DNA of 64,000 bases from Asterias rubens. Lineage: Eukaryota. The position numbers and the translations under genes are program-made. Under the pieces are notes generated by a model. It saw only the letters and a list, made by a program, of their open reading frames with translations. It did no database searches and was not told the DNA's origin. The stretch covers positions 1,240,001 through 1,304,000 of the forward strand of contig NW_022985693.1 in the NCBI RefSeq assembly GCF_902459465.1. The letters run 5' to 3'. Positions 56,901 through 62,900 of the stretch are shown here, in pieces (the stretch's first letter is position 1; each line of letters starts with the position of its first letter).

Positions 56901-59900
56901 CTAAATTTTCACAGGTTTGTTATTTTATATATAAGTTGTGATACACGAAGTGTGGCACTTGGACAATACTGTTTACCGAAAGTGTATAATGGCTTTAAGA
57001 AAAGTACATCTCCACTGATTCCACTGCAGATATTTGTAGTTAAAGTGAGTAAATTTTGATAACAAATTTCCTCTGGTAAAAAAAAAAAGAACACTATGCC
57101 GTTATTGAGATAAGGATTCTTCTTATCAACAACACTGACTACGGTGAAAGGTCATCTACGAAGAAAGGTTGCACCGTGACACGAAACTCTAGTTGTACAT
57201 TATACATATCATAGTTGTGTTATTTTCAGGGCAGGCATAGTCAATCGACTATGCCCCGGGCATAGACACTATGGTGTCATCTTGATAGAAAAAGGGGGGC
57301 ATAGCTATTTCTATGACTCCATTTCAACCAGTCAGATTAGAGGATTCTATATATAAGGTATATAATTGATGATATTACCTTGCCTTATTGTCTTCTCACT
57401 TTGATACTCTATATTGAATTCTGTGATTGTGATTACAATGTCCTCGGCTTTATTTTACATGTCTTTTTTTTTCTTTCTGAAATAAAGACAAAAATTATAT
57501 AGATGATCTTGGTATGTTTTACAGGACAATCCATTGGCCAAGTCTTTGCAGAGAGGGGAAGATCCTCAGTTTGATCAGGTGAGGCAATTTGTTAATACAT
57601 CAAGTGTTATATTAAATGACCTACCTTCCGCCCAGGAAGCAGAGCTGAAAAGTCTTGTGAATTCAGAAAAATCTACTTTGCAGCAGTATAATAAGTAGCA
57701 AGACATGTTCTCAAAGAGCATAATCTACCCAGATGTAGTTATACACATAGTTTTACCGCAAACCAATATACAATTTTACCGCAAACCAAATATAAAATTT
57801 GAAATTACTTTAACAGATGTTCTTTTTACAGATTTTGAGTTCTGTACCTTTCAAATGACTTATTGAATTAATGAAACCATTTAATTTAACTTCACTCGAA
57901 TATTTATTGAACAGAATATTATTTTGATCTTTCTTTATATCATGATTTGTTTACGGTGGCAGCTTTTGAGTTCACTGAGTGCAGTGGCTGAGCATTGTCT
58001 TCCATCGCTTCTTAAGACATTGTTTGATTGGTATGAGCTTCAGAATGAGGATGAAGGAACACAAAGACAAAAAGGAGGATCTGGCAAGTCTAAAGGGTAG
58101 GTATTACCAGGCCTCAAAATAACCAACGGCACCCACATCAATTGCTGTGATACCCTTTACAAAGTTCCAATACAAAGTAACATTTTCCTCATAGAAGTGC
58201 CCCTTATAAAAGGAAAGTGTATATATCAGAGATGCAACTTTTCCGATTTAAATCGGAAAACAGACTTCTCTTATTTGTTCAAAATCTAAAATGTATAAAT
58301 CGGATAAAAAATGTCAGATTTTTTCCCCAATTTATGCTTCCAAATTCGCAATTTTTAAATTTGAAAACCCCGAAAATCGCTGTTAAAACCATAGAGAAAC
58401 TAACACAATCCTGTCTGGTGTCGTCAGCGATCGCGCAAATCACAATGCATGCACCCAGTCTTACTAATTGCTGTCAACTCGCCATCAACTTGATTGTGTC
58501 AGTCAATTCGCCATCAACTCTCAACCACGCAGATATGGCAGGCATGGATAAGTTTTAGTCTTGACCCAAGTCGGCACCGATCAATTTACACGTAGCACAC
58601 CATCCATTATTTATGTCAAGTACAAGAATCCTCAGGAGATCAAAAGAAGGTTTTCAAGATAATTGGTAAGTTGTTGCTCAAACCCAAAACCCCTGTCCTT
58701 CCATCCACTTGCAATGACCAGGACTTAGCAAATGAGTTCCAGAAATTCTTTGTCACCAAGATTTCAGACATCCGCTCATCATTTTCATCAGTCCCTCACA
58801 ACGTGCCGCAGACATTGCCACAACTTCAACCAGAGTGTAGACTATCTGTGTTTGAGCCTGCGACTGTTGCTGAGATTCAAAGGGTTATTATGAAATCTCC
58901 TTCAAAATCCTGTGAGCTGGATCCAGTGTCAACATCCATGATAAAGCAGAACATCAATATTTTTGTACCCTACATCACTAAGCTTGTAAACGAATCCCTC
59001 AGTTCCGGTTGTTTCCCCGATAGCCTCAAAGTTTCCTACATCAGGCCGCTCATCAAGAAACCAAACCTGGACAAGGAGATATTCCAAAACTACAGACCGG
59101 TTGCAAACTTAAAATATCTTGGAAAAGTCATCAAACGAGTAGTTTCATCACGTATTTCTGATCACATTCATACTTTCAACCTGTCCGACGTGTTCCAGTC
59201 AGCATACAAGCCTTTCCATGGGACTGAGGCTGCACTAGTCCGTGTGAGCAACGATATTCTCTCTGCAATGGACAATGGTAACGTTACAGCACTAGTCCTG
59301 CTAGACTTGAGTGCTGCTTTTTACACTGTCGATCACAACATCCTTCTCTCTCGGCTCCAGAATCACCTTGGCATAGAGGACACAGCCCTAGCATGGTGCA
59401 AATCGTATCTCTACAATAGAACTCAGCATGTATGTATTGGCACCGCGATATCCGACCCTGTTGACCCAGAGAGGGGAAGATCCTCAGTTTGATCAGGTGA
59501 GGTCAAGTACAAGAATCCTCAGGAGATCAAAAGAAGGTTTTCAAGATAATTGGTAAGTTGTTGCTCAAACCCAAAACCCCTGTCCTTCCATCCACTTGCA
59601 ATGACCAGGACTTAGCAAATGAGTTCCAGAAATTCTTTGTCACCAAGATTTCAGACATCCGCTCATCATTTTCATCAGTCCCTCACAACGTGCCGCAGAC
59701 ATTGCCACAACTTCAACCAGAGTGTAGACTATCTGTGTTTGAGCCTGCGACTGTTGCTGAGATTCAAAGGGTTATTATGAAATCTCCTTCAAAATCCTGT
59801 GAGCTGGATCCAGTGTCAACATCCATGATAAAGCAGAACATCAATATTTTTGTACCCTACATCACTAAGCTTGTAAACGAATCCCTCAGTTCCGGTTGTT

Positions 59901-62900
59901 TCCCCGATAGCCTCAAAGTTTCCTACATCAGGCCGCTCATCAAGAAACCAAACCTGGACAAGGAGATATTCCAAAACTACAGACCGGTTGCAAACTTAAA
60001 ATATCTTGGAAAAGTCATCAAACGAGTAGTTTCATCATGTATTTCTGATCACATTCATACTTTCAACCTGTCCGACGTGTTCCAGTCAGCATACAAGCCT
60101 TTCCATGGGACTGAGGCTGCACTAGTCCGTGTGAGCAACGATATTCTCTCTGCAATGGACAATGGTAACGTTACAGCACTAGTCCTGCTAGACTTGAGTG
60201 CTGCTTTTTACACTGTCGATCACAACATCCTTCTCTCTCGGCTCCAGAATCACCTTGGCATAGAGGACACAGCCCTAGCATGGTGCAAATCGTATCTCTA
60301 CAATAGAACTCAGCATGTATGTATTGGCACCGCGATATCCGACCCTGTTGTTTTGAACTACTCTGTGCCACAGGGGTCGGTACTCGGCCCGCAGTGGTTT
60401 ACGCTATACACTTTACCGATTCGTGACATCCTGAAATTTAATCTGAGTTACCATGTGTACGCAGACGACACTCGGCTATACATCACGTTTAAATCTTCTC
60501 AAGAAAACGCCAATGCATCTATTGCAAGACTTGAGAAATGCATCCAAGAGATTCGACGTTGGACACAACAAAACTTCCTGAAGTTAAATGATGATAAGAC
60601 AGAGTTCCTTCTATTTGGGTCACGTCAACAGTTAACTAAGGTTTCAGTGCCATACATCTCTATCGGTGATGCTCGGATAGCTCCCTCGCTGAAAGCTCGG
60701 AACTTAGGGGTTATTTTTGATTCATCAATGACACTTCAGCCACACATCAACAACATTGTTCGTTTGTCATCATATCACATCAGGAATATAGCTAAGATTC
60801 GCAAGTACTTGGACAAAAGTGCCACTGAAAAGGTCATACACACATTTGTTACTTCTCGTCTTGACAACGGCAATGCTCTTCTCTACAGTCTTCCTAACAA
60901 CCAGATTTCCAGACTTCAACGGCTCCAAATTACTGCTGCCCGCATTGTGACACTGTCTAGAAAATCCTGTTCTATCACCCCCCATTCTGAAACAACTACA
61001 CTGGCTCCCTATCTCTCAACGAATCATCTTCAAGCTGATGCTCATTGTCCACAAAGCTCTTAATGGCAAGGCTCCCCACTATATTTCTGAACTGCTTCAA
61101 GTTTACACTCCATCAAGGAATCTTCGATCAAGTTCTATGCTTCTCCTCATTGAACCCAAGTCTCGACACTCATGGGGTGACAGGTCTTTTTCTTTAGCCG
61201 CGCCACGCATCTGGAACTCTCTACCACTTAATCTTCGATCTTGTCTTTGTACTGCAAAATTCAAGTCTCTTCTCAAAACTTATCTTATGTCACAGGTTTT
61301 CAATGACTAATTTTGTTGTGTCTGTTTTTCTTTGTGTTGTGTTTTGTTTTTGTTTTGTTTTTGTTTTGTTTTTGGTTTTACTGCGCCTTGAACACCCAAC
61401 AGGGTGGATATGTGCGCATTACAAGTCTTATTATTATTATTATTATTAGTACATAATACACCATTCAGTACCGATCATTGACGACTTAGGTCAAGAATAT
61501 TCCAAATGCAGAAAAGCGCCCTCTGTTGTCGTGTTGCCTGTGAAAATGCAAGATGGCGGTCGACTGTTTTTTTTTTTTTCAACACCTGGTTGCATCTCTG
61601 ATATCCCTCCCAAGTTTGAGGCATGTACTACACATATTGTGCTGGTATTCCTAATTGTTTCAAATAGCATATTTAATATTTGGTTGTGGCTTTTACCGAC
61701 AGTTTAGAACTGGAGTTTAAGAAAAAATTTAACTTAACTTCAATGGTTTTTGTACATGTGTTGTGTGGTTTTTTTTTCACCAAAGTGTCTCTTAATTACT
61801 CCACAGGGAAAAAGACTATGTTTCTGAACGAAGAGATGTGAGTATACATTAATTGTGTATTGAATTAAGGCAACAAATGTATATGATATTGAGATGATAT
61901 TGCTGGTAAGATAAATTATGCCTTCCAGTAAAGGTAGAGGTTGATAAGAATGTTGTGAACTTTACAGTAAGTGATGAAAATGGAAGTCTTGAAGTAGATT
62001 ACCTTGTGTAAAAACTGATGATTGTATTTTTCTCCATAAGATGATCAGACTACTTATCAAAACGCTGAGTTGAAACCAACAGTTGTTTTCAGAACCACCC
62101 CAACTCATTTATAGATTATCATTCCATGGTGTAACTGCAAACCTTACTATATGGTATTTTTCTAATTGTCCAGTTGGCTGTCGACTTCCTGTACTGTCTG
62201 GTATTGATCGAGGTCTTGAAGCAGCTTCATCTCCATCCAGTTCCTGATATTCAACTCAATCATATTGAAACTCTAGCTTTTAAACATTTCAAACACAGAG
62301 ACAGGTAAGTGGAAACACTCCGCTGGCCACTCTTTTAGGCTGTATACTCCTCAGGTAGTTGAGATGGTTAAGGAATTAATTAAGGCCCAGTGACCAGGGG
62401 TAAAAAAGTTGGAAGCACTTTGAGATGCCCTTTGGGTGTGAAAAGCCCTATATAAAAATTGGTTATTATTATTAAAGCTTTTTAGGGCTATGTCAATGAA
62501 GCAATGTACAGACAGCCAGTTGCAGGCAGTCTCCAAGAAAAGAATCCATTCACATTTAATGTTCTCACAATTATCTCGGGAATCGTGAGACATCAATAAT
62601 AGTAATAATAATAATAATAAGACTTGTAATGTGCACATATCCACCCTGCTGGGTGTTCAAGGCGTAAACCGGCTGAAAACCTACCTGTATGCTACCAAAG
62701 TGGTCCCGTAGCATGCACTCTAGTTTGTTGCCTCCACGTTGATGCAAAAGTTGCCTCCTGTGTCAAGGCCCTTAGAAGTATAACCACAGTACACTAGTCT
62801 AAAACCATTCCTGATTGTCCATTCATTTGGTTTATTGCTAATGTAATGAAGTACAAAACATGCATGATAAAACCCAACTTTCCCCACCCCACCTCCACGA

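What the first reader, a model, noticed from the sequence alone, without database searches (positions are those of the whole stretch)
58616..60350. LINE duplication that carries a copy of its host gene's exon end
Seen: an 848-bp LINE segment (58616-59463) is repeated at 59503-60350; I spotted one difference, C59151 versus T60038 at a CpG. Between the copies are ACC and a perfect 36-bp copy (59467-59502) of 57549-57584, which is the last 30 nt of fry exon 3 plus GTGAGG, about 1.9 kb upstream. The second junction has a 1-nt G microhomology. The copy includes intron bases, so the template was DNA or pre-mRNA, not spliced mRNA. Inference: either one replication-based event with two template switches (FoSTeS/MMBIR-like), or a 1.9-kb tandem duplication followed by a ~1-kb deletion that removed the exon 4 copy. 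It is very recent. An assembly error is possible.
Basis: partly seen in the sequence, partly recalled or inferred. Interest (0 to 1): 0.75.

Follow-up and report, generated by a model that had tools for sequence, protein, structure and literature searches.

The report
LINE tandem duplication with exon-edge filler
Inside an intron of a starfish furry-like gene, 848 bases of an old, dead LINE element are duplicated head to tail, and the seam holds a 36-base copy of a nearby exon end; this is a tidy but ordinary scar of DNA copying that switched templates, and no independent reads yet confirm it.

Summary
58616-59463 equals 59503-60350 with one mismatch (C59151/T60038). Between the copies lie ACC and an exact 36-bp copy of 57549-57584, which is the last 30 nt of a furry-like exon plus GTGAGG.

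New here:
- The LINE is a high-copy, 5'-truncated, frame-broken insert spanning 58600-61448, with no target-site duplication.
- The duplication starts 15 nt inside the LINE's 5' end.
- Both copies share at least 5 letters that 96-100% of family reads lack, which suggests the duplication is younger than the insertion.
- T60038 is the derived state (CpG to TpG).

Best reading (0.5): one recent DNA-level event with two template switches during replication or repair synthesis (FoSTeS/MMBIR or polymerase-theta-like).

Rivals:
- assembly or library artefact (0.2)
- LINE reverse-transcriptase template jumping at integration (0.13)
- a 1.9-kb duplication followed by a 1-kb deletion (0.1)

Independent read support was not obtained. 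No indexed run holds the junction words, and the laid runs showed no bridging record. Both tests are weak next to a high-copy repeat.

This is a known kind of structural variant and of modest interest.

The parts
   Evidence: Own frame reading. Gene identity comes from the Pfam MOR2-PAG1_N hit on the downstream exon.
57549..57584 (+). source of the 36-bp templated insertion (last 30 nt of the exon plus 6 intron nt)
   Evidence: Exact and unique pair with 59467-59502.
57963..58096 (+). next furry-like exon (134 nt, ends in phase 2). It is not duplicated.
   Evidence: Own frame reading; it continues in frame into 61807-61837.
58600..61448 (+). 5'-truncated high-copy LINE insert (RT ORF, 3' UTR, (TTA)n tail) in the intron, containing the duplication
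   Evidence: RVT_1 hit. Depth is 100-1400 against about 4 for unique DNA, family reads match from 58601, and an X1 contig joins 58599 directly to GTACATAA = 61449-61456. Tail comparison.
58601..58615 (+). 15 nt of LINE left of the duplication. T58612 and G58615 are private to this copy; the family has C at both.
   Evidence: table 3 (82/82 and 76/79 reads at 58612; 82/82 and 80/80 at 58615, X22) and table 7 (loose end before 58601, 140 reads).
58616..59463 (+). duplicate copy 1 (848 bp), with C at 59151 (family state)
   Evidence: The depth skew (bin 59064-59210 at 372 versus bin 59946-60092 at 65) shows the family has C.
59464..59466 (+). ACC filler. It may be copied from GACCC 10 nt upstream (59453-59457); this is inference.
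59467..59502 (+). 36-bp templated insertion, an exact copy of 57549-57584 in direct orientation
59503..60350 (+). duplicate copy 2 (848 bp), with T at 60038 (derived, CpG to TpG). It runs on into the rest of the LINE.
61807..61837 (+). following furry-like exon (31 nt)
   Evidence: Own frame reading.
62174..62304 (+). furry-like exon encoding the start of the MOR2-PAG1_N domain

Best explanation
This is a real, recent DNA-level complex tandem duplication with an 887-bp period. It lies inside an older, dead, 5'-truncated LINE in an intron of a furry-like gene, and it was made in one event by repair or replication synthesis that switched template twice. A nascent + strand copied the LINE up to 59463 and disengaged. 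It gained ACC, re-primed 1.9 kb back at 57549 and copied 36 nt across the exon/intron border. It then re-primed at 58616 on a single shared G and went on, so 848 bp were copied twice. Which machinery did it cannot be decided: fork stalling/MMBIR, or polymerase-theta joining of an over-extended break end. Shown: the anatomy, the high-copy LINE, and the private letters shared by both copies. Inferred: that it was a single event, the order of the steps, and the enzymes.
For: (1) The anatomy is exact: two 848-bp copies with 1 mismatch, a 3-nt filler, a 36-bp exact copy of a site 1.9 kb upstream in the same orientation, and 1 nt of shared G at the second junction. (2) All templates lie within 2.8 kb in cis. 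Templated insertions 'from nearby sequences' with 0-3 nt of microhomology are the stated signature of iterative template switching (PMC5120786). Spontaneous tandem duplications of 0.1-10 kb (median about 1 kb) with microhomology and occasional templated insertions are described for TMEJ of failed SDSA (PMC8654963). (3) Both copies share at least 5 letters (58711/59598, 58797/59684, 59085/59972, 59283/60170, 59322/60209) that 96-100% of family reads in X22/X23 and all X1/X3 contigs lack, yet the copies differ from each other at only 1 site. The simplest reading is that the insert aged first and duplicated later. (4) The one difference is a CpG-to-TpG change in copy 2, with the family state kept in copy 1, as expected for a young true duplicate. 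(5) A 36-bp templated patch plus filler is not what assembler collapse or false haplotypic duplication produces (inference).
Against: No independent read or contig bridging 59463-59503 was obtained. None of the 7 sampled junction 31-mers is in any indexed run, although X1, from the same species, covers at least 92% of the unique flank. No junction record appears in the truncated tables, and there is no exact protein or peptide hit. The left breakpoint lies only 15 nt from the LINE's 5' end and next to two private mismatches, a coincidence (roughly 1-5% by my estimate) that a DNA-level event does not explain. Microhomology is minimal (0-1 nt). The shared private letters could instead come from a rare source element.
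Confidence: 0.5

Rival explanations
1. Assembly or library artefact: the duplicate with its 39-bp seam is not in the animal's genome. It would come from chimeric molecules or consensus or polishing errors in a high-copy repeat. The C/T difference would then be a polishing effect of paralogous or heterozygous reads.
For: No listed run holds any of the 7 sampled junction words. X1, same species with 0 differences over 57300-57924 and 58290-58523, shows no junction contig. The locus is flanked by a LINE with 100-1400x depth, where polishing is unreliable.
Against: The negative tests are weak. Logan contigs drop rare variants, and X1 also fails to show the window's own flank/LINE junction haplotype (T58612 with G58615), which must exist if the LINE is there. 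X22/X23 are another species at about 4x depth. An exact 36-bp patch templated from 1.9 kb upstream plus a 3-nt filler is a biological junction signature, not a known assembler error (inference).
Confidence: 0.2
2. The structure was born with the LINE insertion. During target-primed reverse transcription (or second-strand synthesis), the LINE reverse transcriptase stopped near position p (59503), jumped onto nascent furry pre-mRNA (sense strand, present at the locus) and copied 36 nt. It then added 3 untemplated nt, jumped onto a LINE RNA 848 nt downstream of p and copied to p-15, where the cDNA was joined to the target. The result would be a tripartite LINE/pre-mRNA/LINE chimera.
For: All three parts have the same sense orientation as the LINE and the gene. 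The two stops (59503 and 58601) correspond to LINE positions only 15 nt apart, as expected from a shared RT stop region, and the duplication sits at the very 5' end of the insert. The 3 extra nt at a jump are typical of non-templated addition. Double template jumps during LINE reverse transcription are documented (PMC2104539). The insert includes intron bases, which is compatible with pre-mRNA.
Against: Both copies share at least 5 letters absent from 96-100% of family reads but differ from each other at 1 site, so the duplication looks about ten times younger than the insert unless the source was a rare lineage. Known chimeras join different RNAs end to end, not a LINE to an overlapping part of itself. 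No target-site duplication brackets the whole structure (0-1 nt). This model needs two LINE RNAs or re-copying of a template already in a hybrid. A template 1.9 kb away in cis is equally well or better explained by DNA.
Confidence: 0.13
3. Two separate DNA events: first a 1,918-bp tandem duplication of 57549-59463 with ACC at its seam, which also copied the next exon; then a 1,031-bp deletion (copy of 57585-58615) with 1-nt G microhomology that removed the extra exon.
For: It gives exactly the same final sequence. The intermediate would carry a second 134-nt exon (not a multiple of 3), so a deletion removing it could be favoured (inference).
Against: It needs two rare events within the time of one substitution in 848 bp, passing through a probably harmful intermediate. 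It also needs the deletion to leave just 36 bp. A one-event explanation exists.
Confidence: 0.1

Closest known systems
FoSTeS/MMBIR complex duplications with templated insertions at the junction (human genomic disorders; PMC5120786)
   Same: Copy-number gain, a junction that carries a short stretch copied from nearby sequence, 0-3 nt of microhomology or small fillers, and two switches implied.
   Different: Much smaller (0.9 kb rather than kb-Mb). It is a germline variant in an echinoderm intron, and neither de novo status nor a single event is shown.
Polymerase-theta (TMEJ) tandem duplications from failed SDSA in C. elegans (PMC8654963)
   Same: The size class matches (0.1-10 kb, median about 1 kb). 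It is a direct repeat whose seam shows minimal microhomology and a templated insertion.
   Different: TMEJ templated inserts usually map to the immediate break flanks. Here the template is 1.0-1.9 kb from either breakpoint. No genetic dependence can be tested.
LINE-mediated bi- and tripartite chimeric retrocopies made by RT template jumps (PMC2104539)
   Same: Same-sense fusion of a LINE 3' part to a copy of a cellular transcript, with a few extra nt at a seam, located at the element's 5' end.
   Different: The third part is the same LINE overlapping itself. The middle part is 36 nt of unspliced RNA or DNA. There is no bracketing target-site duplication, and shared private letters suggest the duplication is later than the insertion.
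'Mirage' splice-junction minisatellites (amphioxus; reported for this genome in earlier scan notes s1-150317, s1-150083)
   Same: An exon edge with its splice signal is copied into an intron.
   Different: Here there is one dispersed 36-bp copy 1.9 kb away at a duplication seam, not a tandem array at the exon border. The native donor at 57579 is not repeated in situ.

Membership tests
Non-LTR retrotransposon (LINE) | Reverse-transcriptase domain of the RVT_1 type | tested here: met
   Pfam RVT_1, E 1.4e-26, residues 128-382 of the ORF 59558-61060. Atlas neighbours are all RVT_1, some with an AP-endonuclease domain.
Non-LTR retrotransposon (LINE) | Dispersed high copy number with 5' truncation and a simple-repeat 3' tail | tested here: met
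   Depth of 100-1400 rises toward the 3' end, against about 4 for unique DNA. Family reads continue left of 58601 where the window copy stops. The (TTA)n tail ends at 61448.
FoSTeS/MMBIR-type complex rearrangement | Copy-number gain with templated insertion(s) at the junction, implying iterative template switches | tested here: met
   The 848-bp gain and the exact 36-bp insertion templated 1.9 kb upstream. Criterion as stated in PMC5120786.
FoSTeS/MMBIR-type complex rearrangement | Microhomology at the switch points | tested here: inconclusive
   There is 1 nt (G) at 59502/59503 and a 3-nt filler at the other junction, with no direct microhomology. Blunt or 1-2-nt junctions are accepted in that literature but are not diagnostic.
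FoSTeS/MMBIR-type complex rearrangement | Arose in a single replicative event | not testable with these tools
   This needs a pedigree or population alleles. The final sequence is the same under the two-step model.
TMEJ tandem duplication (failed SDSA) | Direct duplication of 0.1-10 kb whose seam has microhomology and/or an insertion templated from the break flanks | tested here: inconclusive
   Size and seam type fit, but the template lies 1.0-1.9 kb from the breakpoints rather than at them.
LINE RT template-jump chimera | Parts fused in the same sense, LINE at the 3' end | tested here: met
   the LINE ORF, the 36-mer and the gene are all on the + strand.
LINE RT template-jump chimera | The whole chimera is bracketed by one target-site duplication and formed at integration | tested here: not met
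   A paralogous contig joins 58599 to 61449 with 0-1 nt shared, so there is no TSD. Private letters shared by both copies argue that the duplication came later. The second point is an inference, not proof.
Mirage splice-junction minisatellite | Tandem array of the exon edge plus splice signal at the exon border itself | tested here: not met
   57549-57584 is single at its native place, and the only other copy is 1.9 kb away.

The most novel reading that the evidence does not exclude
The structure was made by the LINE's own reverse transcriptase at the moment of insertion. In that reading it jumped from LINE RNA onto the nascent pre-mRNA of the gene it was landing in and back onto LINE RNA. This would be a natural record of a retrotransposon enzyme using unspliced host pre-mRNA in cis as a template, leaving a ready-made splice donor (and a formally in-frame 27-nt candidate exon) in the intron.
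Probability: 0.13. Interest if true: 0.6.

Novelty: new member of a known kind. Interest (0 to 1): 0.3.

Why it matters
If real, this is a clean base-resolved natural example, in an echinoderm germline, of a small tandem duplication whose seam was patched with sequence copied from 1.9 kb away. That mutational signature is mostly documented in human disease, cancer and nematode mutants. It also shows how such an event can move an intact exon end and splice donor into a downstream intron. It does not open a new question. Its main value is as a well-resolved case and as a test of whether such seams are made by DNA polymerases or by the retroelement's enzyme.

Tried and rejected
- Junction-specific run search: none was listed. 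This is weak, because only 7 sampled words were used and the junction is flanked by high-copy words.
- Laying reads and contigs of 4 runs: very informative on the LINE family, its 5' end, the empty paralogous site and the private letters. It gave no listed record across 59463-59503.
- Exact-protein look-ups of the chimeric ORF from its ATG and TTG starts: not on record.
- Homology search on the junction peptide, residues 225-273: 4 candidates, none significant.
- TRF: cannot see an 887-bp period because its maximum is 500.
- Motif scan for upstream furry exons to check the numbering 'exon 3': nothing found, so the numbering stays unverified.
- Blast of the left against the right LINE flank: only a 16-nt inverted match. 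This gives no clear terminal repeats and no TSD.
- Considered and rejected: a mirage minisatellite (not tandem at the exon), spliced-mRNA origin of the 36-mer (it holds 6 intron bases), and false haplotypic duplication (it does not explain the 39-bp seam).
- The first attempt at look-up of sequencing runs failed because the tool was busy.
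Full report
**Observation**

- Segments 58616-59463 and 59503-60350 are 848 bp each, 887 bp apart, and differ only at C59151/T60038 (CACGT versus CATGT).
- Between them lie ACC (59464-59466) and 36 bp (59467-59502) identical to 57549-57584. This is the only other occurrence of that 36-mer in the 64-kb window.
- G58615 equals G59502, so the second junction has a 1-nt ambiguity.
- The window has no N.

**Host gene**

On the + strand, 57525-57578 reads [18 protein letters not shown] and is followed by GTGAGG. 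The next exons, by my own frame reading, are 57963-58096, 61807-61837 and 62174-62304. The last of these hits Pfam MOR2-PAG1_N, the N-terminal domain of Furry/Mor2 proteins (E 2.3e-07). So the 36-mer is the last 30 nt of a furry-like exon plus 6 intron bases, and the duplicated LINE lies in the next-but-one intron. The number 'exon 3' could not be checked.

**The LINE**

- The ORF running from copy 2 to 61063 has an RVT_1 domain. Its nearest Atlas clusters are eukaryotic RT proteins, some with AP-endonuclease domains.
- The right breakpoint (60350) lies inside the RT domain.
- The element ends in a 3' UTR with a (TTA)n tail at 61448. The last 65 nt recur at two other places in the window.

**What the laid reads and contigs added**

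- *Species.* X1 matches the unique flanks with 0 differences over 57300-57924 and 58290-58523, so it is the window's species. X3/X22/X23 ('organism B') differ by about 3.7% in the intron, so they are a relative.
- *Copy number.* The LINE has depth 100-1400, rising toward the 3' end, against about 4 for unique DNA.
- *True 5' end.* Family reads match the window back to 58601 and then continue with their own upstream LINE sequence (140 reads in X22, agreement 0.99). The window copy is therefore 5'-truncated at 58600/58601, and the duplication begins 15 nt inside it. In those 15 nt, T58612 and G58615 are private to this copy; the family has C at both.
- *Insert limits.* An X1 contig covering 58514-58599 continues with GTACATAA, which is 61449-61456, the first bases after the LINE tail. 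Its depth is about 6x that of unique contigs, so it is probably a paralogue of a moderately repeated host sequence. It fixes the insert as 58600-61448, with no target-site duplication (0-1 nt).
- *Shared private letters.* Both duplicate copies share letters that 96-100% of family reads and all contigs lack: 58711/59598, 58797/59684, 59085/59972, 59283/60170 and 59322/60209.
- *Direction of the one difference.* The bin holding C59151 collects 372 reads of depth and the bin holding T60038 collects 65, while other homologous bins are equal. The family therefore has C, and T60038 is a derived CpG-to-TpG change.
- *Frame break.* The window copy has one extra base in a C-run at 60978 relative to 87% of family reads. 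This explains the frame break at 61063.

**Is it real?**

I could not show it with independent data.
- A run search with only the junction stretch (59436-59532, 7 sampled words) listed no run.
- No junction-bridging record appears.
- Exact look-ups and a peptide search for the chimeric ORF found nothing.

These negatives are weak. Logan contigs drop rare variants next to high-copy words. X1 also fails to show the window's own flank/LINE haplotype. The raw-read runs come from another species at about 4x.

Against an artefact stands the nature of the seam. An exact 36-bp patch templated from 1.9 kb upstream plus a 3-nt filler is a biological junction signature. It is not what collapse or false haplotypic duplication gives.

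**Mechanism**

All templates lie in cis within 2.8 kb and in direct orientation. The simplest path is one nascent + strand that:
1. left the template at 59463;
2. gained ACC, possibly copied from GACCC 10 nt upstream (inference);
3. re-primed at 57549 and copied 36 nt;
4. re-primed at 58616 on one shared G.

Templated insertions from nearby sequence with 0-3 nt of microhomology are the stated hallmark of iterative template switching in FoSTeS/MMBIR (PMC5120786). Spontaneous tandem duplications of 0.1-10 kb (median about 1 kb), with microhomology and occasional templated insertions, are made by polymerase-theta joining of failed SDSA intermediates in C. elegans (PMC8654963). I cannot decide between these two. 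The template's distance of 1.0-1.9 kb from the breakpoints fits the former better.

**Timing**

The copies share at least 5 private letters but differ from each other at one site. If the private letters arose after insertion, the duplication is roughly ten times younger than the insert. This supports a DNA-level event in an old, dead LINE. The caveat is that a rare source lineage could have carried those letters. A few reads (about 1%) in organism B do carry them.

The left breakpoint is 15 nt from the LINE's 5' end, and all parts are same-sense. This invites a model in which the LINE reverse transcriptase jumped from LINE RNA to nascent furry pre-mRNA and back to LINE RNA at integration. Double jumps are documented (PMC2104539). 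I give it 0.13, for these reasons:
- the timing argument above;
- the absence of a bracketing target-site duplication;
- the need for two LINE RNAs or re-copying of a template;
- the fact that known chimeras join different RNAs.

The two-step model (a 1.9-kb duplication, then a 1-kb deletion) yields the same sequence, but it needs two rare events within the time of one substitution.

**Context from earlier notes (unchecked leads)**

Notes from the scan name the genome Asterias rubens and report many 'mirage' splice-junction minisatellites. The present case is not one: the donor is not repeated at its native exon border. A note on this window (s1-170826) flags the insert as a candidate 27-nt microexon. 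My frame check agrees that AG|27 nt|GTGAGG would be in frame and stop-free between 58096 and 61807, but no RNA evidence was obtained.

**Verdict**

This is a known kind of structural variant: a small complex tandem duplication with a templated seam. Reality in the animal still needs the assembly's own reads or PCR. Interest is 0.3.

Noticed in passing
window 59470-59496: The insert sits behind ...GACCCAG, so AG|27 nt|GTGAGG is formally an in-frame, stop-free candidate microexon between exons 57963-58096 and 61807-61837. It would add EGKILSLIR-like residues. No RNA evidence was obtained.
   Followed up: partly
window 58077: The only X1 contig here has GATC inserted (GATC to GATCGATC) inside the coding exon (table 4). 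That would shift the frame. It looks like a filled-in and religated GATC restriction site, so X1 may be a Hi-C-type library rather than carrying a real variant.
   Followed up: no
window 58476-58599 and 61449-61562: Both flanks of the LINE have 3-6x the depth of unique DNA, and a paralogous contig joins them directly. The LINE therefore landed in a moderately repeated, unclassified host sequence, without a target-site duplication.
   Followed up: partly
window 61384-61448; 62600-62664 (-); 5648-5707 (-): A roughly 65-nt 3' module (…CTTGAACACCCARCAGGGTGGATATG… followed by (TTA)n) is shared by the LINE and two other short elements in the window. It is probably a common LINE/SINE 3' end recognised by the same RT.
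   Followed up: no
window 60978 and 60426: The window's LINE has one extra C in a C-run at 60978 compared with 87% of family reads, which breaks the frame at 61063. It also lacks a CAT that about 55% of family reads carry after 60426. These point to subfamily structure in the LINE family.
   Followed up: no
window 56519-56599 / 56874-56954 and 56640-56664 / 56974-56998: An 81-nt direct repeat (81% identity) and a 25-nt inverted repeat lie upstream of the exon. They are probably two copies of a small repeat element in the preceding intron.
   Followed up: no
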